DNA from: Ostrea edulis
Lineage: Eukaryota
Reading direction: 5' to 3'
Assembly: GCF_947568905.1 (NCBI RefSeq)
Contig: NC_079164.1
Coordinates: 92,318,001 to 92,382,000, forward strand
DNA: 64,000 nt
Part shown: piece after piece, positions 49,202 through 63,275 of the stretch
How the letters are laid out: every line of letters begins with the position of its first letter
Numbering within the stretch: position 1 is the stretch's first letter
The notes under the pieces: generated by a model
Told to the model about the DNA's origin: nothing
Seen by the model: only the letters and a program-made list of their open reading frames with translations
The model's database searches: none
Position numbers and translations under genes: made by a program

Positions 49202-52200
49202 TCAATGATGAAGATATTAAGCGAGTCTTTGAATTTCGCGGGAGAATATCATGAAAATTGATTATTTATATATAATTAGCACCTTACAATTAATGATTTA
49301 TTATAATTCGCTACATGGATACATATTTCTAATGTATGGTAATACGAAATTGTCCAAGAAGAAACGATATGTAGACCTTCAACTGAAGGCTAAGAATACA
49401 GACAAGGGCAGTTCGAAATGGAGGATATATTAAATACCGATAGTTAGTCCGCTACCTCACTGTCCCATATATATACATGTACGTATAACGAGTTACATTA
49501 CACGGTGTTATGTATATACAAACAGGACCGACTACATGTAGACTAGTACTGATGCGTTGTATGTGGTACGATGTGTACGATATGACGACAGTGTTTTGTA
49601 CGTGATTTACACGTTGACGAACTAGGAAACTTGGCAAGGTTTTACTGATGGCAGTGTTTTCAGGTTCTCTAATTCTACAATGATTATATAAAATCACTGT
49701 AAAGATTTTATGTATTCCTTAGTATTGTAGACACCGTGTGATAAGTTACTGCGTGGTGGGGTACAATAATCGCACAAAAGTAGCACCCGAAACATGCATG
49801 TCATTTCATAAAATGTTTTCTTTTGTCCTTTGATAATTTTCAATATCAAAAAGTTAGGTCTAAGGTCTAAACTAAATATTTTTTATAATACTGACTGATG
49901 CTGATTAATGCTAATTAAAAGTTCTTGATATCTATCTGTTTTGTTAGTGTACTAATTACTTTTTATATATATATATTCTTTTGTATTCATATGTAAATTT
50001 CTCTCCTAGATAATCAATCACGTGGTAGCAGCGCCTATCGATAAATTGATCACTAACGCCGCAGTAGAGAGTGAGTAATAATTTTGGACTTATCAATATT
50101 TATGGTTGAAAGTGGAAAAACTGTGTTAATTTCCACTCAATATAGTTAAGGTTAATTAATAACCAAAGAAAATGTGTATGTTGCCACCTTTTTAAAGATG
50201 CCAGATATACAAAAACAGAAGTATATGTTAACATCAGAAAATCACACATTTTCGTTATACGAAAGATTTAAAATAGATAAAAACTTGTTGAAATGACAAA
50301 TTTTAAATGTCAACAGTGTATAAAAACCTACTAATTCATAAATATGTATAAATTAAATTGTGGATATTAGGGAATTCATTATCTCATAGACATGCATTAG
50401 AAGAAATACCAGCATAGGAGTTTTTGCCTTGACAACATTTTTTGAATTATAAATAATTGATTATCTATGGAAAATAGTTAACTTTTTTTATTCAGTAAAT
50501 AAAATTCCTTTCAAAGATATATTTCTATCATGCACAAAGTTTAATTTAATAAAGATTTTTGCAAAAACATATGACATCACAGAAGGATCGATCAACCTTA
50601 AGCCAGTTTCCGTTGATGCATGGGTTTTTTGGTTTTTTTTCAATCATCAATGAACAACAAACGCATATAAATCTCGCAAATTGACATAACTGCTTTTGTT
50701 TCAGCGACTTCATTTGACATCGTTGCAAATGTCAGCACTAAAACCCTCCGTCTGGAGCTGGACATATTGATAAATCTTGACGACTATGTGGAAACACAAA
50801 GAGAACTGTGAGTATAGATAGAGGGGGCGGGGGCGGGGGCATCGATCATATTAATAAAGTAAATCTCAGAAGAATTCGTTCATTCCAGCCATATCAAGAA
50901 TAGTCATTTATATCAATGTAATATGTTAAAGAGAAGGAAAAAAACTTCTAGAAGCAAGGGTCCCTTGGGCCACAGTGCTCACCTGAACCAGTTGTTCAAA
51001 CAGGGATAAAACTAGGATCTTTCATTCTTATTTATATACTTTCTATTAAGATACTTTCATATTAGTTAGACTAACTGTAATCTTGTGGTTTTTTGAAAGA
51101 TAATTCTTTAGTATTGCTAAACAAGATACCATGTCCCTGTTAAATAGTAGTGCTACACAAGATACCATGCCTCTGTTAAATAGTGCTACACAAGATACCA
51201 TGCCCCTGTTAAATAGTGCTGCACAAGATATCATGCCTCTGTTAAATAGTAGTGCTACACAAGATACCATGCCTCTGTTAAATAGTGCTACACAAGATAC
51301 CATGCCCCTGTTAAATAGTGCTGCACAAGATATCATGCCTCTGTTAAATAGTAGTGCTACACAAGATACCATGCCTCTGTTAAATAGTGCTACACAAGAT
51401 ACCATGCCCCTGTTAAATAGTAGTGTTACACAAGATACCATGCCTCTGTTAAATAGTGCTACACAAGATACCATGCCTCTGTTAAATAGTGCTGCACAAG
51501 ATATCATGCCTCTGTTAAATAGTAGTGCTACACAAGATACCATGCCTCTGTTAAATAGTGCTACACAAGATACCATGCCCCTGTTAAATAGTAGTGTTAC
51601 ACAAGATACCATGCCTCTGTTAAATAGTGCTACACAAGATACCATGCCTCTGTTAAATAGTGCTGCACAAGATATCATGCCTCTGTTAAATAGTAGTGCT
51701 ACACAAGATACCATGCCCCTGTTAAATAGTAGTGCTAAACAAGATACCATGCCTCTGTTAAATAGTGCTACACAAGATACCATGCCTCTGTTAAATAGTG
51801 CTACACAAGATACCATGCCCCTGTGAATTAAATAGTAGTGCTACACAAGATACCATGCCTCTGTTAAATAGTAGTGCTACACAAGATACCATGCCTCTGT
51901 TAAATAGTGCTACACAAGATACCATGCCTCTGTTAAATAGTAGTGTTACACAAGATACCATGCCTCTGTTAAATAGTGCTGCACAAGATACCATGCCCCT
52001 GTTAAATAGTAGTGTTACACAAGATATCATGCCTCTGTTAAATAGTGCTACACAAGATATCATGCCTCTGTTAAATAGTAGTGCTACACAAGATACCATG
52101 CCTCTGTTAAATAGTAGTGTTACACAAGATATCATGCCCCTGTTAAATAGTGCTACACAAGATATCATGCCTCTGTTAAATAGTGCTACACACGATACCA

Positions 52201-55200
52201 TGTCTCTGTTAAATAGTGCTACACAAGATATCATGCCTCTGTTAAATAGTGCTGCACAAGATATCATGCCTCTGTTAAATAGTAGTGCTACACAAGATAC
52301 CATGCCTCTGTTAAATAGTGCTACACAAGATACCATGCCCCTGTTAAATAGTAGTGTTACACAAGATACCATGCCTCTGTTAAATAGTGCTACACAAGAT
52401 ACCATGCCTCTGTTAAATAGTGCTGCACAAGATATCATGCCTCTGTTAAATAGTAGTGCTACACAAGATACCATGCCCCTGTTAAATAGTAGTGCTAAAC
52501 AAGATACCATGCCTCTGTTAAATAGTGCTACACAAGATACCATGCCTCTGTTAAATAGTGCTACACAAGATACCATGCCCCTGTGAATTAAATAGTAGTG
52601 CTACACAAGATACCATGCCTCTGTTAAATAGTAGTGCTACACAAGATACCATGCCTCTGTTAAATAGTGCTACACAAGATACCATGCCTCTGTTAAATAG
52701 TAGTGTTACACAAGATACCATGCCTCTGTTAAATAGTGCTGCACAAGATACCATGCCCCTGTTAAATAGTAGTGTTACACAAGATATCATGCCTCTGTTA
52801 AATAGTGCTACACAAGATATCATGCCTCTGTTAAATAGTAGTGCTACACAAGATACCATGCCTCTGTTAAATAGTAGTGTTACACAAGATATCATGCCCC
52901 TGTTAAATAGTGCTACACAAGATATCATGCCTCTGTTAAATAGTGCTACACACGATACCATGTCTCTGTTAAATAGTGCTACACAAGATATCATGCCTCT
53001 GTTAAATAGTGCTACACAAGATATCATGCCTCTGTTAAATAGTAGTGCTACACAAGATACCATGCCTCTGTTAAATAGTAGTGTTACACAAGATATCATG
53101 CCCCTGTTAAATAGTGCTACACAAGATACCATGCCTCTGTTAAATAGTGCTACACACGATACCATGTCTCTGTTAAATAGTGCTACACAAGATATCATGC
53201 CTCTGTTAAATAGTGCTACACAAGATATCATGCCTCTGTTAAATAGTGCTACACAAGATACCATGCCTCTGTTAAATAGTGCTACACAAGATATCATGCC
53301 TCTGTTAAATAGTAGTGTTACACAAGATGCCATGCCCCTGTTAAATAGTGCTACACACGATACCATGTCTCTGTTAAATAGTGCTACACAATATACCATG
53401 CTTCTGTTAAATAGTGCTACACAAGATATCATGCCTCTGTTAAATAGTGCTACACAAGATATCATGCCTCTGTTAAATAGTAGTGCTACACAAGATATCA
53501 TGCCTCTGTTAAATAGTAGTGTTACACAAGATATCATGCCCCTGTTAAATAGTGCTACACAAGATACCATGCCTCTGTTAAATAGTGCTACACACGATAC
53601 CATGCCTCTGTTAAATAGTGTTACACAAGATACCATGCCCCTGTTGTGGCCCCGCTCTATCCACTGAGGGACGTAGTTTACGCAAACCTGACACTACAGT
53701 GCATGACGATGCGAACATGTTACATAATTAATTGTGGGTTTTTTTCAGTACTTTAGAAGGCCGTATAAGGAAGAAAAGGAAGGCGACTAGAAACAAGAGA
53801 AAACGCTGGCCAAACAGAGAGGTCCCATACATCGTTACAAATGATTTCAGTACGTAAAAAATCATAACCCGGATCATTTCGTTTGTCCATAATGTCTTTG
53901 GCTGTTGTTTTTCCATGAATTTTTACAGAGATAAGTTAGTCAAGAAGGTTTCATATTAGAAGTCGTTCATAGTCAGGATGATGATATTTGCTTTGCTTTT
54001 GTTGTTGTAAAAAAGTTGTACCCACCCCCGAAAGAGGTACTCACTTTTACAATTATAAGAAATCGGGGGGGGGGGGGGGGGGTAGTACGCGTAAAACGTT
54101 GCAGTACTATACAAACCTTGATTTATATCCAATTATGCGAAATTCCTTATTTAAATTCGAAAATCTTAATATCAATTTGCAAAAATTTTGATTTATATTC
54201 GTTAATCTTGATATTTATAATTATATGCGAAAATGAATATAAATATAAATCAAAATTTTTGCACATAGATATCAAGATTATCGAATATAAATCAAAATAT
54301 TTGCATATAGATATCAAGATTATTGTATATACATCAAAAATTTTAAAGATTATTGAATATATATATCGAAATTTTCGCATAAAAATATTAAGATTATCGA
54401 ATATTACTCAAGATTTTCGCATATGAATAACTAGATTATCGAATATAAATCAAGATTTGTATAATATTTCAACGTTTTAGCCTTAGCTTTCTAACATAAT
54501 AGGATGTATATTTTTAAAAACTAATGGTTGCATCATCATGAAAATAGGTGTATATTTTCAAAAGGTTTACATCACACGAAAAGCATCAAGTATTTATTTT
54601 CAAAATATTCAGCACACCTTTGTTTCCTAATATACGTCAAGAAAACTGTAAAATCTCAACCCAATTATTAGTATTTTCCCTGAACCAGTAGTACATTTAT
54701 TGATATAAGTAAACATTTCTTTTGACTTGATTTGTTCATTTATTAATTTGATGTACACGTTGATATTGAATGCTACATTCCAGTTTAAACAAATACCGTG
54801 GTAAACAATTAAGAGCGAACAAAAAAATAAATGAATAAAAAAAATCGCTAAAAATTAATGCTGATTTTGTTGCCTTTCTCCAGGTTCTGGGGACAGGGTT
54901 CAGATTAAAGCTGCCGTGAATGAATGGAGTAAGTACACGTGTCTAAACATCAGGGAGGCCACATACAGGGACGCCAACAAAGTTCGATTCCAAAACGGAA
55001 ACGGGTAAGGCGATGTATGGGTGTAGGTTTGACGTGTTCGGTGGAGAATCTTCCTCGGTAATGTGATAGATGGGTGTAGGTATGGCGTGTTCGATGGATA
55101 ATCTTCCTCGGTAATGTGATAGATGGGTGTAGGTATGTCGTGTTCGGTGGAGAATCTTCCTCGGTAATGTGATAGATGGGTGTAGGTATGACGTGTTTTG

Positions 55201-58200
55201 TGGAGAATCTTCCTCGGTAATGTGATAGATAGAGTAGGTATGAAGTGTTCAGTGGAGAATCTTCCTCGGTAATGTGATAGATGGGTGTAAGTATGACGTG
55301 GAGAATCGTCCTCGGTAATGTGATAGATGGGTGTAAGTATGACGTGGAGAATCTTCCTCGGTAATGTGATAGATGGGTGTAGGTATGTCGTGTTCGGTGG
55401 AGAATCTTCCTCGGTAATGTGATAGATGGGTGTAGGTATGTCGTGTTCGGTGGAGAATCTTCCTCGGTAATGTGATAGATGGGTGTAGGTATGTCGTGTT
55501 CGGTGGAGAATCTTCCTCGGTAATGTGATAGATGGGTGTAGGTATGTCGTGTTCGGTGGAGAATCTTCCTCGGTAATGTGATAGATGGGTGTAGGTATGA
55601 CGTGTTTTGTGGAGAATCTTCCCCGGTAATGTGATAGATGGGTGTAGGTATGAAGTGTTCAGTGGAGAATCTTTCTCGGCAATGAGGGATTTGTTCTTCA
55701 CCTGCAGTAAAATGAAGTCGATGTGATGACCGTGAATAGGGTTCAGCACATGACAATTCTGACTTTACATTGTAGGTGCTCATCTTATATCGGTATGGTC
55801 AAAGGAGAACAAGAGTTAAATCTGGGGAAGAACTGTCGAGTGGTAAGTTATCGATTGTTGAGAAAATTACACAGTTTTTAAGATGTAACTTTAATAATGA
55901 AATGATATTTTTATATGTTTTGTAATAGTATTTGATGTACGCAAATACACCTTTCTACACCTTCATCAGTGCAACCATCTGCAGACAACAGCGATAAAAA
56001 CTTAGATAAAAATAAAACAAAATAAATACCACGAACATCAATTTCTTGTAGTTTTGAATTGTTTGGTCCTGTTATTAACCTATTGAAAAACAGAGTTTCT
56101 TTTTTTTTTTTTTAAAGAAAAGAGTTATAGTGCATGAACTCGGGCACGCCATCGGATTCCAACATGAGCAGTCTCGACCGGATAGGGACGCATTTGTAGA
56201 AATCGTCAAGGAAAACGTACCATCAGCACTGGCGTATAACTTTGATAGGCTCCCGGAAAGCAAGATTGAACATTTCAATGTGGATTACGATTATCGGAGC
56301 ATTATGCACTATAGCTCAAAGGTGTGTTGAAATTTAATAGGGGTATGGACTGAAATGAGATGTTTCACATGCATGATTTGAACTACACTGTATTTTTCTC
56401 TTATTTTTCTTTTAAAAACTTAGATATATTATGCCTCATCTCTGATTATGAACGCATTCCTACAAGCAGATCTGTTGTATTTAATTTATCCGTTTGGATT
56501 TCTAATGCCAGGCTTTTTCTACAAGCAGATCTGTTGTATTTAATTTATCCGTTTGGATTTCTAATGCCAGGCTTTTTCTACAAGCAGATCTGTTGTATTT
56601 AATTTATCCGTTTGGATTTCTAATGCTAGGCTTTTTCTACAAGCAGATCTGTTGTATTTAATTTATCCGTTTGGATTTCTAATGCCAAGCTTTTTCTACA
56701 AGCAGATCTGTTGTATTTAATTTATCCGTTTGGATTTCTAATGCCAGGCTTTTTCTACAAGCAGATCTGTTGTATTTAATTTATCCGTTTGGATTTCTAA
56801 TGCTAGGCTTTTTCTACAAGCAGATCTGTTGTATTTAATTTATCCGTTTGGATTTCTAATGCCAGGCTTTTTCTACAAGCAGATCTGTTGTATTTAATTT
56901 ATCCGTTTGGATTTCTAATGCCAAGCTTTTTCTACAAGCAGATCTGTTGTATTTAATTTATCCGTTTGGACTTCTAATGCCAGGCTTTTTCTACAAGCAG
57001 ATCTGTTGTATTTAATTTATCCGTTTGGATTTCTAATGCTAGGCTTTTTCTACAAGCAGATCTGTTGTATTTAATTTATCCGTTTGGATTTCTAATGCCA
57101 GGCTTTTTCTACAAGCAGATCTGTTGTATTTAATTTATCCGTTTGGATTTCTAATGCCAAGCTTTTTCTACAAGCAGATCTGTTGTATTTAATTTATCCG
57201 TTTGGATTTCTAATGCCAGGCTTTTTCTACAAGCAGATCTGTTGTATTTAATTTATCCGTTTGGATTTCTAATGTCAGGCTTTTTCTACAAGCAGATCTG
57301 TTGTGTTTAATTTATCCGTTTGGATTTCTAATGTCAGGCTTTTTCTACAAGCGGATCTGTTGTGTTTAATTTATCCGTTTGGATTTCTAATGCCAGGCTT
57401 TTTCTACAAATGGAATGATAACTGTGAGGACGAAGGATCCACAGTATCAGAACGTCATTGGGAACGCTCTTGGTCTCAGCTTCCGGGATATCAAACTGGC
57501 TAACCGGATGTACAGCTGTAACGGTAAAGCAAACGGAAACAGTTTATAAAATAGATCTAACTAGCCAACATTGCTACATCGCCCTTTTAACGACATTAAC
57601 AAGTTTTTAAATGTTTCAAATATTTTTCATTGTAACGATGTCGATAAGAATGTGAATTTCTGGATTTGGTTATATTTGGAAGCTACAGAACTGTAGTTCT
57701 ATAGGGAAAAACTTATCTGTTCCAAAAAGAAGAGAGAAGCCCATTATTTTCTTTGAAAGCTATGATTCTGCAACTGATTTGTCGACTGTCAATCTTAAGT
57801 ACAGAGGATAAACAGTTCTACACTCTATATTCTACAGAAAACTGTTCAGCGGTCAAGTGTCCTGGGCAAGGTTTCCAAGCTCAGGACTGTCAGTGTTACT
57901 GTCCATCTGATGACACGGCAAACCCACTGAGGGTGTGTGACGAAAGCGATGTCGTCACCGACAAACCAACCGTAACCTCAACACACCGGACCACCCCAGC
58001 AACGGAAACGCCCGTGTCAGGTGAATTTGTCAACGAACCAAACTTTCCTTGATACAACTTTTATCAATTCACGGTTTAAACATCTTATAAATCGTTTATC
58101 AAAACTTCACAGGCAAAATAATGAGAACATGTTGCCAGTGAAAAGATCTCTGTACATAAATGTATGTAATAAAATTACTGAAAAATACAATTGAATTTCT

Positions 58201-58791: not shown

Positions 58792-59519
58792 TTGCAAATG
58801 AAGAATTTCAAAGACCTACCATTGAAGTATTTATTCTAAATTCATCTACGCGACAGAGTGCTTCAGTTGGAAGTGATACAACAAATCAGATATGGAATAC
58901 GAAGGTCTTCTATTGCGACATCTGAATAATACTGGCCATGTTTCGCAAGTTGATGCTAGTGCACGTGACCGACCAAGTTGCTGATATGTTGACACAATAT
59001 GATACCTCCTAAAACCTCTTAGCAAATGCGCCTTTGCAGGACGAAAATATGAGAAATTACATGCATTCTTGGAGTCTATCAATGATGATCCCCGGTGAGA
59101 TATTCATGGCATACGAATAGACAAATTGTACATTCTGTTTTAATGGATGGTGCAGCTCATCAGCGCGAAGCTACATATACTTTCAATCCCGCCCAAGGTA
59201 GCATACTGTGATATCACACATTGATTGTTTGAATTTATTTTCCTATCACTAAAATAAATTACAGAATTTACTCTCGGGTTGTTTACTGTTAAATTTGTAT
59301 AGGATCTGCATGTATTTGTAGATTTTTTATTTCCGAAAGCAAATACCATCGAAAAATGTGGTTGGTTTTTTCCCCGCTGTTTTATTAGCTTTCATAAATC
59401 TTTTTTAACAAAAACTTAACAATGAATTCACATAGTTCCGATAATGTCACTATCACAACACATGTGTATTCCTCTCATCGCTCCTCTCATCGCTCCCATC
59501 CTCTTCTGGATTGTCTTTT

Positions 59520-61496
59520 CTACACCTCCCGTGAATCCTCGACTTCCATCGAGTCTTTGTAGATTCCACTGTGCTCCTGGGAGATAGAAAGATCCTCTTC
59601 ATGAACAGATCCATGGTCATGCTCCTGTTCTGTAGAATCGTCGTATTCCTCATATTCATCCCCTTCAGAGTCTTCTGATTCGTATGAATCATCCTCAAAT
59701 TGCTCAGATGCATCGAATGTTTCATCCGAAGTGTGTTCCATTTCATGGGAGTTGGACTCTTCATGTGAGACAGTTTCCACTTCATGCGAATTCTCTTCAA
59801 CTTCACGCGAGTCGTCCATCTCTTCCGAAATATCCACTGAAGGTTTAGGGGGTACTATGTGTGATTTTTGTGACTGAACATTCTCTTCTCGAGAATCATC
59901 TACTTCGTCATGTATTTCGTTGCTATCTTCATATTGATCATCGTCGTAGTTATCAATGAATTCTGTAGACTGGCTGTTTTCGAAAGAGTCCATTTGTTCT
60001 TGGGATATATCATCTTCATCGGAATTAGCATATGCCCCCAGAATGGCGGGGTTTGGATGCACTCTGCTTTGAAATTTAGGGTGGCCAATTTTAACTCCTG
60101 TGCGATTATTGTCTTTTGGGTAGTGGTTGCCTATAGAGTTTATACATTGGTTAAATATTTTTATTATGGATTTGTGAACAAACGATAGTTTGATTGTGTT
60201 TAATTCATAATTACTCACCTCCTATGTGGTTCGTCTCAAATACCCAGGCATCAGTAGTTTTGAATTCGGATAGACTCACAACACCATCACCTGAAGAAAA
60301 TAAGACATCGAAAATAGATTATATAAATGCAAATCATTACAGAATTAGATCTAGAGAACATGAATTACAATACTAGCGATATAAAACTCGAATAAAAAAT
60401 ATTTTTAAAAAAATATTTTGGGTATCAGTAATTTACCATTTTTGTCGGCAGCGCGGAATGCAACTTTGACGTGGAGATCACGTGGTTTGTGTCCTAGAGT
60501 TCTCGCAAATTCATTGAGCGAAATAAGTCCGTCTTCGTTCACGTCATAGAATGATAATCCTCTGGGCAGTGGAGTTATGTGCACATTTCCGTCTGTCTCT
60601 GACTGTAAATAAAATAGAATTACAATTATTCATAAACCTTCTTAGATTGGAATAAAATACTGTTTTTAATTTCTTTTTCCGAAGAGAATTATTTGTAACA
60701 CCAAACCCAGACTAACAGATTGAGAAAAAGATAGAGGTCTAAAAATCTGCAATTCCAACACTTTTCGTTAAAAAGGATGATATAAAAAATGCAATTAATC
60801 TTGATTCCTGGGTTTTTTCCCCAAAAATATTTGCAATGACTAAAACAATACTGACATTTAAAAGGTTTTTTTTTTTTAAATGATAGAGATCCTGAAAATT
60901 TGCAACCAGAAATGTGGTACAAATAAGATGAAATACCAAACATTGCACAAATAAGATGATATACTAAACCGTACAAAAGATGGTAGAATCATAGCCAGTT
61001 CATATCTATTAAGGAATAGATACTCTAGGTTGCCTGTATTGTGGAGTATATATAATTAATGGAACCATGGAGCAATTTGTACAATAGGCAAAGTCATTCA
61101 TTCAAAATTCTCCCTTGTTTCCACTGTTTTCATATTCCTTAGAAAGCACACAACCTAGACATCTATTTCTTATATTCCTATTTTGTTACTATAGATGATC
61201 AGTGCCGTTATTGAGATGTTCTAATAAACAGTTAGGGAATTAAATAGTCAATATATTACCAGCATTTTCAACGACTGCTTTCCCGTGTATTTGTTGGTGC
61301 ATACATGTCTCAGAATGAACCCACAAGTAAAATCAGAACCAAATCCGGTGTATTTACGGCAAACTCTTGGAGTAACCACGTGACAATGTCCTGAAATCAG
61401 GTCCCTTAAAGACATTTTTAAATCCCATTTTGAAGCCGAAGCCACGAGAATTGGAAATAAGAATATGATACACAATTTGCAGACTTCAGAGAGCAT
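59520..61496 (-). CDS. Secreted EF-hand calcium-binding protein with Cys motif and acidic S-x-E-rich tail, ~361 aa
   Basis: Exons 61496-61260 (signal MLSEVCKLCIIFLFPILVASA plus 4-Cys motif), 60602-60437, 60290-60219, 60130-59520; phases fit. EF loops DVNEDGLISLNE and DKNGDGVVSLSE, the second split by an intron. Confidence 0.85.
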
Positions 61497-61536: not shown

Positions 61537-61544
61537 TATTTATA
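61537..61544 (-). promoter_or_regulatory. Putative TATA box of the EF-hand gene
   Basis: TATAAATA on the minus strand ~40 bp upstream of the ATG at 61496, at the edge of a (TA)n run. Confidence 0.35.
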
Positions 61545-62634
61545 TATATATGCCTCGAGTGACCGTGGGCAATAGACATTATGTAACATTCTTGGTCATG
61601 AAAGTGCTAGGGTTCTTTGACATATCAATTTGCCTTTGTTAAACATGCTTCAGCTGACAGGTTTATGTAACAAGAATGTCTCGTAATTCATCCCTACGTG
61701 TCACATAATCAGGCCCAATTGTCAGAACATTAGAAACCATAACGAGGCTCCTTACTCCTACCATTTCGTCCTTCTTAAATGATAAGCGACAAATCAGTCT
61801 TCAGGAAAGATTTAGAAGGAAACAATTAATGGATGAGGCATATTTATCACTTTGTTCTTAGAATACAATATATGATATTTACATTTGCTGTACAAGTATA
61901 TATTGAGTGAGTAATTCTGCTTGTTGGACTGGCGTGGTGAGTGAGTAATTCTGCTTGTTGGACTGGCGTGGGCTTTGACCATTGTTTGTCATCTGGAAAT
62001 TTTGGTATTTGATAGAACTAACAATGTACGTGACAGTTTATCATAATTGTTAATCATAAACATCGTGTGAATAACAATTCGCTACAGGACATAAACTGGG
62101 TGTTTCCATTGTTCTAAAACGATGCAGTTGTAATCGATGCACAGATATTAACGGCTGGGAATTCCGGCATAGAAATACAAGAAATGTCTTCTTTATTTAT
62201 CTATTTATTAAATATATATAGGTATGAAGCGTTGCAGTTAATATTTCAAAAATGAAGTAAAATTTCTTACTTCTTGTAGTACAGGGAATCTGCAGAATTC
62301 TAAATTAAGGAACAAGTTTTGCACAGTTATTAGGAACATCTAGCTTTTACTGGGAACTTAAAGCAGAGTTCGTATAAAGAACATGCATGTATATATACGA
62401 AGGGCTTATAGGGAGATAAACGATGATATTTTGAGAACTTGTGAGTTCTTATGGAACATATACAAGGAATTTATAAAGTTCTAAACGATAATATTTTGAA
62501 AACTTGCGAGTTCTTTTAAGGAACATATATAAGAATTTATAGAATTCTACACGATGATATCTTGAGAACAGGAAGGTTTCTTCAGAATAGGTATCGAAGT
62601 GAGAGCAGAAAATTACTAAATGAGATCAGAAGCT

Positions 62635-62918
62635 TTTTTTCTTCAGACAAGCTACTTCACATGTAAATATACATCTTTTCTCTTTTTTCTTCAGACAAGC
62701 TACTTCACATGTAAATATACATCTTTTCTCTTTTTTCTTCAGACAAGCTACTTCACATGTAAATATACATCTTTTCTCTTTTTTCTTCAGACAAGCTACT
62801 TCACATGTAAATATACATCTTTTCTCTTTTTTCTTCAGACAAGCTACTTCACATGTAAATATACATCTTTTCTCTTTTTTCTTCAGACAAGCTACTTCAC
62901 ATGTAAATATACATCTTT
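62635..62918. repeat. 48-bp minisatellite, ~6 units (TTCTTCAGACAAGCTACTTCACATGTAAATATACATCTTTTCTCTTTT)
   Basis: Directly visible. Confidence 0.95.
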
Positions 62919-63275
62919 TAATTGAATACAATAGAATGCAGAACATGGCATGTGATTTGTAGACATGTCAATATACATGTATGTAAGGACGTTCTCACAC
63001 CTTTACATGCAGGGAGCAATGATGGAAATGAATGAGAACGTTTCGGTCTCAATCAGACAGGTAGCAGATTTATTTATGACACCGCCGTTCGGAATTCTGA
63101 AGGCATAACACACCTAAAAATTGTAATGGATGAATAATTTTGTGGTGGTTTGAAAAATTGTGAAATCGTTGACACAAAAAACTTTTTTGAAATGTATTTC
63201 CATAGCCATTAATTTATGAACAATGCAATTAAATCACCCGATTACATTTGTTTCCTATTCTTATTGTTGGAAATT

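What the first reader, a model, noticed from the sequence alone, without database searches (positions are those of the whole stretch)
59520..61496. Secreted Cys-motif/double EF-hand protein with a SIBLING-like phosphorylatable acidic tail
The ORF track shows only fragments. Spliced, it has a signal peptide, C-x7-C-x11-C-x7-C, two canonical EF loops and a ~170-aa D/E/S/H-rich tail with 17 S-x-E motifs (the FAM20C consensus), including three DSRE repeats. Secreted EF-hand proteins and acidic proteins are each known in mollusc shell matrices; this combination may be undescribed. It is a candidate biomineralisation or Ca-storage phosphoprotein (inference).
Basis: partly seen in the sequence, partly recalled or inferred. 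Interest (0 to 1): 0.75.

Follow-up and report, generated by a model that had tools for sequence, protein, structure and literature searches.

The report
Oyster secreted EF-hand protein, acidic tail
This is a real four-exon oyster gene for a secreted calcium-binding protein related to a limpet shell-matrix protein (EFCB1), with an added acidic tail whose probable phosphorylation sites are strictly conserved, so it is a good but unproven shell-mineralisation candidate.

Summary
On the minus strand, four GT-AG exons (61496-61260, 60602-60437, 60290-60219, 60130-59520) encode 361 aa: a signal peptide, C-x7-C-x11-C-x7-C, two canonical EF loops, and a 168-aa D/E/S/H tail. The tail has 17 S-x-E (5.3 expected, p<5e-5) and three DSRE.

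The splice model is confirmed in two ways. A paralogue in the same genome has identical exon lengths and phases. Annotated orthologues also align exon by exon: Saccostrea echinata XP_061163063 "starmaker-like" and Magallana gigas XP_011436261 "protein starmaker".

The architecture is therefore not unseen, but I found no paper that characterises it. The N-terminal Cys/EF module is shared with short proteins of Haliotis, Gigantopelta and Patella. Two mass-spectrometry peptides of the Lottia shell-matrix protein EFCB1 (B3A0Q5) carry the family signature H-x-T-P-x-P...YD-x-NEDG-x-IS.

Against a 57%-identical orthologue tail, all 17 S-x-E serines are conserved, versus 6 of 12 other serines. E-x-S and S-x-x-D/E are not enriched, which points to Fam20C-type phosphorylation. 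The genome has two Fam20-domain genes.

Expression, shell presence and phosphorylation in oyster remain untested. "SIBLING-like" is analogy, not homology. I never built or searched the joined protein.

The parts
61537..61544 (-). TATA-like element (TATAAATA on the minus strand), 41-48 nt upstream of the ATG
   Evidence: Read from the sequence. That it is a promoter element is inference.
61260..61496 (-). Exon 1, 79 codons, phase 0: start codon, signal peptide, Cys motif
   Evidence: It is 73/79 identical to residues 1-79 of annotated Saccostrea XP_061163063. The paralogue has the same 237-nt exon.
61434..61496 (-). Predicted signal peptide, residues 1-21, cleavage after VASA
   Evidence: Hydrophobic core LCIIFLFPILV with A at -3 and -1. 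No predictor was run, so this is read from the sequence.
61299..61385 (-). Cys motif C38-x7-C46-x11-C58-x7-C66
   Evidence: It aligns to cysteines 1, 3, 4 and 6 of the six-Cys motif in gastropod relatives.
60437..60602 (-). Exon 2, 166 nt: H-x-T-P-x-P motif, EF-hand 1, linker, first three residues of EF loop 2
   Evidence: Pfam EF-hand_1 E=3.9e-5. It is 51/55 identical to P0004 residues 80-134.
60510..60545 (-). EF loop 1, DVNEDGLISLNE
   Evidence: Canonical 12-residue loop.
60219..60290 (-). Exon 3, 72 nt, phase 1: rest of EF loop 2 (G-DGVVSLSE) and the exiting helix
   Evidence: The paralogue and the orthologue contig L010 have the same 72-nt exon.
59520..60130 (-). Exon 4, 611 nt with stop: short basic/His linker, then the acidic tail
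   Evidence: The orthologue tail in L010 ends with the same EVEDSREV.
59523..60026 (-). Acidic D/E/S/H-rich tail (168 aa) with 17 S-x-E and 3 DSRE
   Evidence: The single-sequence AlphaFold2 model has no secondary structure, mean pLDDT 54.
59381..59386 (-). First AATAAA on the minus strand, about 135 nt after the stop
   Evidence: Read from the sequence. That it is a poly(A) signal is inference.

Best explanation
The locus is an intact, single-copy oyster gene, probably from Ostrea edulis, for a secreted protein built of three parts. Part 1 is a small disulfide-stapled Cys module. Part 2 is a calmodulin-lobe-like pair of canonical EF-hands. These two parts together form the conserved core of a molluscan family that includes the Lottia shell-matrix protein EFCB1 and short proteins of abalone, Patella and Gigantopelta. 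Part 3 is a fast-evolving, probably disordered acidic tail found in oysters and scallops but not in the gastropod members.

Proposed mechanism (inferred). The signal peptide takes the protein into the secretory pathway. In the Golgi, a Fam20C-type kinase phosphorylates the S-x-E serines. The secreted product pairs a specific Ca2+ site (the EF pair) with a polyanionic phospho-Ser/Asp/Glu/His tail that binds Ca2+, amorphous carbonate or crystal faces, and so modulates CaCO3 nucleation or growth in the shell matrix.

Shown here: the gene structure, family membership, canonical EF loops, and the enrichment and conservation of S-x-E. Inferred: secretion, phosphorylation, shell localisation and the effect on mineral.
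For: Gene model: all introns are GT-AG and the frame is consistent. A paralogue on G000:C2 has identical exon sizes 237/166/72 nt and phases. Exon-by-exon alignment falls at residues 1-79, 80-134 and 136-157 of the annotated orthologues P0004 and P0156. Against orthologue contig L010, exons are 74-86% identical and introns 62-70%.

Family: an exon-2 profile searched against 1.84 billion proteins returns Saccostrea, Pecten and Haliotis full-length proteins with the match at the same position. Magallana, Gigantopelta and Patella members come from the word searches. Lottia shell-matrix EFCB1 (B3A0Q5) yielded the MS peptides ...GHVTPIPNSFAAYDMNEDGIISR and AYSIADVDGDGELSPK, which carry the family signature.

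EF pair: orthologues score above the Pfam cut-offs (EF-hand_1 40 bits vs 25.4; EF-hand_7 36.1 vs 30). The AlphaFold2 EF region has pLDDT about 90 and superposes on calmodulin lobes at 2.3-2.5 A.

Phosphosites: 17 S-x-E against 5.3 expected, with E-x-S and S-x-x-D/E not enriched. Against a tail only 57% identical, 17/17 S-x-E serines are conserved versus 6/12 other serines (Fisher p=0.002), and 15/17 sites share alignment columns. Saccostrea and Magallana orthologues have 36-37 S-x-E among 65 Ser.

Kinase and precedent: two Fam20-domain genes lie in this genome. FAM20C protein and phosphorylated S-x-E sites occur in the Lottia shell matrix. fam20C knock-down disturbs nacre in Pinctada.
Against: There are no expression, proteomic or phosphoproteomic data for the oyster gene. 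EFCB1 is a minor Lottia shell component and was not among the reported phosphoproteins. It also lacks the long tail, so shell presence of the tailed bivalve form is extrapolated. EFCB1 membership rests on two peptides and on RefSeq naming of the gastropod relatives, not on a full alignment. Shuffle tests assume independent positions, and old degenerate [DN]S[HR]E repeats could inflate the count. Which of the two Fam20 genes is the Fam20C orthologue was not determined. S-x-E-rich secreted acidic proteins also serve outside mineral (caseins, phosvitin, adhesives).
Confidence: 0.6

Rival explanations
1. A secreted or luminal calcium-binding phosphoprotein with a role outside the shell. Examples would be a Ca2+ store or carrier in the secretory pathway or haemolymph, a component of larval or adult cement or mucus, or an egg or nutrient phosphoprotein like casein or phosvitin.
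For: The same features fit this reading: signal peptide, EF pair, and an acidic S-x-E tail. No tissue data are available. The neighbouring genes give no mineralisation context.
Against: The core module is shared with a protein recovered from Lottia shell. There is no KDEL/HDEL-type C-terminus (the protein ends SREV). There is no match to SPARC, CREC or nucleobindin-type Pfam families.
Confidence: 0.25
2. The tail works as an unphosphorylated polyanion or His-rich metal binder. Under this reading the S-x-E excess is a by-product of descent from a short [DN]-S-[HR]-E-x-E repeat unit, not selection for kinase sites.
For: Orthologue tails contain clear NSHE/DSHE/STEHEYED repeats. His is the commonest middle residue of S-x-E in both orthologue tails examined, 11 of 36 in Saccostrea and 11 of 37 in Magallana.
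Against: The window tail has no detectable tandem array. All 17 motif serines are nevertheless kept across 43% divergence, while half of the other serines changed. The middle residue varies freely, as expected for S-x-E recognition.
Confidence: 0.1
3. The spliced model is wrong, or the locus is a pseudogene.
For: The joined protein was not searched, and no O. edulis transcript was seen. The Logan contigs that carry the tail ORF are genomic.
Against: Splice sites are canonical and there are no in-frame stops. The paralogue has identical exon architecture. Residue-exact agreement with annotated orthologues holds across all three junctions.
Confidence: 0.02

Closest known systems
[quoted passage not shown]
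   Same: Its shell-derived peptides carry H-V-T-P-I-P...A-Y-D-M-N-E-D-G-I-I-S and A-D-V-D-G-D-G-E-L-S-P-K. These match the window's HITPLP...FYDVNEDGLIS and ADKNGDGVVSLSE, and the Patella, Haliotis and Gigantopelta relatives. RefSeq names those gastropod relatives 'EFCB1-like'.
   Different: EFCB1 is 224 aa, so it has no room for a long acidic tail. The gastropod relatives have pI 7.5-8.7 and 0-1 S-x-E. The full EFCB1 sequence was not on hand, so its Cys motif was not checked.
RefSeq predicted orthologues: XP_011436261 'protein starmaker' (Magallana gigas), XP_061163063 'starmaker-like' (Saccostrea echinata), XP_052717758 (M. angulata)
   Same: Same architecture. Exon 1 is 64-73 of 79 identical and exon 2 is 48-51 of 55 identical. 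The tails are E/S/H-rich with 36-37 S-x-E.
   Different: Their tails are about 345 aa with explicit NSHE and YEDSTEH repeats and a different C-terminus. The window tail is 202 aa and ends EVEDSREV. These are automatic predictions, and I found no paper on them.
Vertebrate SIBLING/SCPP phosphoproteins (DMP1, DSPP, osteopontin) and zebrafish Starmaker
   Same: Secreted, acidic and disordered, with dense S-x-E or D-S-S sites used by Fam20C to control mineral (established knowledge; review PMC7948968 listed). The C2 paralogue and the Pecten member have phosphophoryn-like D/S runs.
   Different: There is no sequence homology: the tail hits no Pfam family. There is no RGD. The mineral would be CaCO3 rather than apatite. 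SIBLINGs have no folded Cys/EF-hand module. The resemblance is convergent.
Acidic EF-hand larval shell proteins of Zhao et al. 2018 (C. gigas CGI_10012241; P. fucata pfu_aug2.0_3796.1_22455)
   Same: Described as secreted, acidic (pI 4.3-4.4), D/E-rich, carrying EF-hand domains, and without similarity to known proteins. The M. gigas orthologue here has 16% E, 10% D and pI 4.6.
   Different: Identity could not be tested because their sequences and supplements were not available. The computed pI does not match exactly.
Other secreted EF-hand proteins (SPARC/osteonectin, CREC family, nucleobindin, MCFD2)
   Same: Signal peptide plus an EF-hand pair in the secretory pathway.
   Different: No SPARC_Ca_bdg or other family-specific Pfam hit. 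No HDEL. The Cys pattern is different. PDB profile and fold searches find only generic calmodulin lobes.

Membership tests
EF-hand pair (Pfam PF13499 / PF00036) | Two 12-residue loops with D1, D/N3, D/N/S5, G6, hydrophobic 8 and E12, about 36 residues apart | tested here: met
   DVNEDGLISLNE and DKNGDGVVSLSE; the first loop residues are 36 apart.
EF-hand pair (Pfam PF13499 / PF00036) | Score above Pfam gathering cut-off | tested here: inconclusive
   Exon 2 alone scores 23.3 bits against a cut-off of 25.4, because the domain is split by an intron and the joined protein was not searched. Orthologues 87-93% identical in exon 2 score 37.5-40 bits for EF-hand_1 (cut-off 25.4) and 34.3-36.1 bits for EF-hand_7 (cut-off 30).
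EF-hand pair (Pfam PF13499 / PF00036) | Four-helix EF lobe fold | tested here: met
   AlphaFold2 model of orthologue P0004:22-165: the EF region has pLDDT 87-94 and matches calmodulin lobes at rmsd 2.3-2.5 A over 54 residues.
EFCB1-like molluscan secreted Cys/EF-hand proteins (shell matrix) | N-terminal signal peptide | tested here: met
   Hydrophobic leader with A-x-A cleavage context in the window gene and all full-length relatives. No predictor was run.
EFCB1-like molluscan secreted Cys/EF-hand proteins (shell matrix) | Cys ladder (up to C-x3-C-x3-C ... C-x3-C-x3-C) just before the EF pair | tested here: met
   Alignment A4: oysters keep Cys 1, 3, 4 and 6; the scallop keeps 2, 3, 4 and 5; gastropods keep all six. 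Not checked in Lottia EFCB1 itself.
EFCB1-like molluscan secreted Cys/EF-hand proteins (shell matrix) | H-x-T-P-x-P motif followed by [FA]-Y-D-x-N-x-D-G EF loop 1 | tested here: met
   Window HITPLPRGLSFYDVNEDG; Lottia EFCB1 peptide GHVTPIPNSFAAYDMNEDG; Patella HHVTPLANQLSAYDLNDDG.
EFCB1-like molluscan secreted Cys/EF-hand proteins (shell matrix) | Protein recovered from shell matrix | not testable with these tools
   Shown for Lottia EFCB1 only: 10 peptides, 66.5% coverage. No oyster shell proteome could be matched to this gene.
SIBLING / SCPP acidic phosphoproteins | Sequence homology to DMP1, DSPP, OPN, BSP or MEPE families | tested here: not met
   The tail gives 0 Pfam families at E<=1. 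Orthologue full lengths hit only EF-hand models.
SIBLING / SCPP acidic phosphoproteins | RGD integrin-binding motif | tested here: not met
   No RGD in any exon translation.
SIBLING / SCPP acidic phosphoproteins | Dense Fam20C-consensus S-x-E sites in an acidic disordered region | tested here: met
   17 S-x-E in 168 aa, p<5e-5. Conserved in orthologues. No predicted structure.
Fam20C substrate | Serines actually phosphorylated by the Golgi kinase | not testable with these tools
   Only the consensus, its conservation and the presence of two Fam20-domain genes in the genome could be shown.
Starmaker (zebrafish otolith matrix protein) | Homology to zebrafish Stm | not tested
   The name comes from RefSeq's automatic naming of the orthologues. 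No Stm sequence was on hand. I expect compositional similarity only.

The most novel reading that the evidence does not exclude
Pteriomorph bivalves fused an ancient molluscan shell-matrix Cys/EF-hand module to rapidly evolving Fam20C-substrate tails. They then split it into two paralogues: one with an E/H-rich S-x-E tail (this gene) and one with a D/S phosphophoryn-like tail (C2 paralogue, Pecten). This would be a convergent, experimentally tractable invertebrate counterpart of the vertebrate SIBLING/Starmaker system. The two tail chemistries might serve different minerals or life stages, for example larval aragonite versus adult calcite.
Probability: 0.3. Interest if true: 0.65.

Novelty: new variant of a known kind. 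Interest (0 to 1): 0.45.

Why it matters
Whether molluscs use Fam20C-type extracellular phosphorylation to control shell mineral is still largely open. Current evidence is one knock-down study in Pinctada and a small Lottia phosphoproteome.

This gene offers a concrete, conserved candidate substrate with three useful properties:
- a folded Ca-binding head shared with a verified shell protein;
- a tail whose 17 consensus serines are all kept across 43% sequence divergence;
- a sister paralogue with a different, D/S-type tail.

That makes a clean experimental pair for testing how phosphorylated disordered tails tune CaCO3 formation. It also corrects misleading database names such as 'starmaker' and 'germ cell nuclear acidic protein-like'.

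Tried and rejected
- **Joined protein.** Everything was done exon by exon or on annotated orthologues.
- **Pfam on exons 1, 3 and 4.** Nothing found.
- **Word search with the tail ORF.** It returned only genomic ORF fragments. The Logan contigs were genomic, not transcripts, so no direct RNA evidence was obtained.
- **Link to the C. gigas larval shell protein CGI_10012241.** The paper's supplements are not held. The identifier appears in no other paper. The XP accession and the names 'starmaker' and 'aspartic and glutamic acid-rich' gave no oyster expression study. The link is left open.
- **Pinctada EFCBP, PFMG1 and abalone SMP5.** I looked at these as possible relatives. No sequences were available and SMP5 shows no Cys motif, so I made no claim.
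- **EFCB1 phosphorylation.** It is not among the accepted Lottia phosphoproteins.
- **Helical CHCH-like hairpin for the Cys motif.** AlphaFold2 instead drew two beta hairpins, but at pLDDT 57-69, so the fold is unresolved. Foldseek and the PDB profile search found only calmodulin lobes.
- **SPARC, CREC or nucleobindin membership.** Rejected: no family hits and no retention signal.
- **Earlier notes of this scan.** A word search found nothing relevant.

Full report
**Source.** The window is G000:C1:92318001-92382000 of an 894,786,893-base assembly. That size equals the published 894.8 Mb Ostrea edulis assembly (PMC10979132). I treat O. edulis as very likely but not proven.

**Observation.** Reading the minus strand and translating the pieces gives four exons: 61496-61260, 60602-60437, 60290-60219 and 60130-59520.
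- Every intron starts GT and ends AG behind a pyrimidine-rich tract.
- The phases are 0/1/1 and the sum is 1086 nt, that is 361 residues plus stop.
- Exon 1 encodes a hydrophobic leader (cleavage context VASA|S) and C38-x7-C46-x11-C58-x7-C66.
- EF loop 1 (DVNEDGLISLNE) lies in exon 2.
- EF loop 2 (DKN-G-DGVVSLSE) bridges exons 2 and 3 through a split Gly codon.
- Both loops are canonical.
- Exon 4 holds a short basic/His linker and a 168-aa acidic stretch with 64 D+E, 28 S, 10 H and 6 K+R.
- Composition-preserving shuffles give 5.3-6.1 S-x-E, and none of 20,000 reached 17.
- The excess is directional and specific. E-x-S is 7 against 5.3 expected, and the CK2-type S-x-x-[DE] is depleted at 5 against 9.2.
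- TRF sees no real tandem array in the tail DNA.
- A TATAAATA lies 41-48 nt upstream of the ATG, and an AATAAA lies about 135 nt after the stop. Their roles are inferred.

Exons were searched by reference, and full-length questions were answered with annotated orthologues returned by the searches.

**The splice model is right.**
- A six-frame search of the same genome with exons 1 and 2 finds a paralogue on G000:C2.
- Its exons are 237, 166 and 72 nt with the same phases. They are followed by a 995-nt last exon that encodes a D/S-rich tail.
- A JGI contig from a related oyster (L010) carries exons 2-4 with the same junctions. Nucleotide identity there is 74-86% in exons against 62-70% in introns and 60% in the 3' flank.
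- A profile of exon 2 was run against 1.84 billion representative proteins. It returned full-length annotated proteins in which the match sits at residues 80-134, exactly where exon 1 (79 codons) would put it.
- These proteins are XP_061163063 'starmaker-like' of Saccostrea echinata, XP_062584903 of S. cucullata, XP_033728346 of Pecten maximus and XP_046355718 of Haliotis rufescens.
- A word search added XP_011436261 'protein starmaker' of Magallana gigas and its M. angulata counterpart.
- The window's four exon peptides align to residues 1-79 (73/79 identical), 80-134 (51/55), 136-157 and 160 onward of the Saccostrea protein.
- Only one other exon-1 match exists in the genome, so this is the single orthologue of the 'starmaker' type.

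**Family.**
- A profile of the N-terminal regions found further short members in Gigantopelta aegis and Patella caerulea.
- All members share a signal peptide, a Cys motif, usually a dibasic site, then H-x-T-P-x-P and the EF pair.
- Gastropod members are 198-234 aa, have pI 7.5-8.7 and carry no acidic tail. Oyster and scallop members carry tails of 200-360 aa.
- EFCB1 (B3A0Q5, Lotgi1|230492, 224 aa) is a Lottia gigantea shell-matrix protein identified by mass spectrometry (PMC4094399).
- The peptide tables of that paper list DVTQQLNQQGHVTPIPNSFAAYDMNEDGIISR and AYSIADVDGDGELSPK for it.
- The first peptide carries the family-specific H-x-T-P-x-P motif directly before EF loop 1. In the 21-residue span from that His to the loop Ser (window HITPLPRGLSFYDVNEDGLIS) it shares 12 of 21 positions with the window.
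- I therefore file the gene in an EFCB1-like family.

**Cys motif.** In alignment A4 gastropods have six cysteines arranged C-x3-C-x3-C ... C-x3-C-x3-C. Oysters lack the second and fifth, and the scallop lacks the first and sixth. These paired losses suggest a C1-C6, C2-C5, C3-C4 ladder between two antiparallel segments. This is inference. AlphaFold2 on the Saccostrea orthologue draws two beta hairpins there, but only at pLDDT 57-69. The EF pair reaches about 90 and superposes on calmodulin lobes. No known fold or Pfam family covers the Cys part.

**Tail.**
- The single-sequence model has no secondary structure and mean pLDDT 54, which is consistent with disorder.
- Against the L010 orthologue, the tail is 57% identical (117 of 206 columns).
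- All 17 S-x-E serines are conserved and 15 of 17 motifs occupy the same columns. Only 6 of 12 other serines are kept (Fisher p=0.002).
- Saccostrea and Magallana tails have 36-37 S-x-E among 65 serines (about 11 expected), again without E-x-S or S-x-x-[DE] excess.
- The middle residue varies, with His commonest.
- This is the pattern expected if S-x-E itself, the Fam20C consensus, is under selection.
- The genome encodes two Fam20-domain genes.
- In Lottia shell, FAM20C protein and many pS-x-E sites were found.
- fam20C knock-down disturbs nacre in Pinctada.
- The C2 paralogue and the Pecten member instead have D/S runs resembling phosphophoryn, with D-x-S and S-x-D enriched.

**Interpretation.** The most likely reading is a secreted shell-matrix or extrapallial Ca-binding phosphoprotein: a folded EFCB1-type head plus a phosphorylated polyanionic tail that modulates CaCO3 formation.
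- Secretion, phosphorylation and localisation are inferred.
- Non-shell secretory roles cannot be excluded without expression data.
- Zhao et al. 2018 report acidic EF-hand proteins in the larval shells of C. gigas (CGI_10012241) and P. fucata. These may be this family, but I could not obtain their sequences.

**Novelty.** The architecture already exists as automatic RefSeq predictions under misleading names. The head belongs to a proteomically known but uncharacterised shell-protein family.

Three points appear to be undescribed in the literature I could search:
- the family definition;
- the bivalve-specific tails in two chemistries;
- the site-level conservation of S-x-E.

'SIBLING-like' is functional analogy only.

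Noticed in passing
G000:C2:9909246-9911552 (L006:5246-7552, + strand): Paralogue with identical 237/166/72-nt exons but a 331-aa last exon rich in Asp and Ser, with phosphophoryn-like DSS/SSD runs followed by a non-acidic C-terminal part. Its Saccostrea orthologue is misnamed 'germ cell nuclear acidic protein-like'.
   Followed up: partly
G000:C1:101029300-101029764 (L005:1177-1641; L011): Third, divergent family member. One exon encodes a Cys-rich motif (C-x3-C-x3-C...C-x3-C-C-x2-C-x3-C) plus DRKRD, followed by an EF-hand exon (43% identical to window exon 2). No acidic-tail ORF lies within 8 kb downstream, so it may be a short gastropod-type form.
   Followed up: partly
Alignment A3/A4, between the Cys motif and the EF pair: Furin-type dibasic sites (RVRR, RSKR, RGKR, VKR) occur in the C2 paralogue, Pecten and the Haliotis, Gigantopelta and Patella members, but not in the window gene or its 'starmaker' orthologues (KQSLKML). 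The Lottia EFCB1 peptide DVTQQ... follows an Arg. In those proteins the Cys module may be cleaved off.
   Followed up: no
window 59470-59496: A 12-nt unit TCCTCTCATCGC repeated 2.2 times, perfectly, just downstream of the stop codon in the presumed 3' UTR.
   Followed up: no
window 51046-53667, 54950-55783 and 62620-62946: Long minisatellite-like arrays that give open frames on both strands (for example [11 protein letters not shown] units and FLQTSYFTCKYTSFLF units). They look like non-coding tandem repeats flanking the gene.
   Followed up: no
G000:C4:21752197-21754180 and G000:C2:34393200-34396227: Two Fam20-domain (PF06702) genes in the same genome, both above the Pfam cut-off. Which one is the Fam20C orthologue and which is Fam20B-like was not determined.
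   Followed up: no
window 57753-58052 (+): Cys-containing ORF at the 3' end of the neighbouring plus-strand gene (the protease gene noted by an earlier finding). It lies convergent to the EF-hand gene, with about 1.5 kb between them.
   Followed up: no
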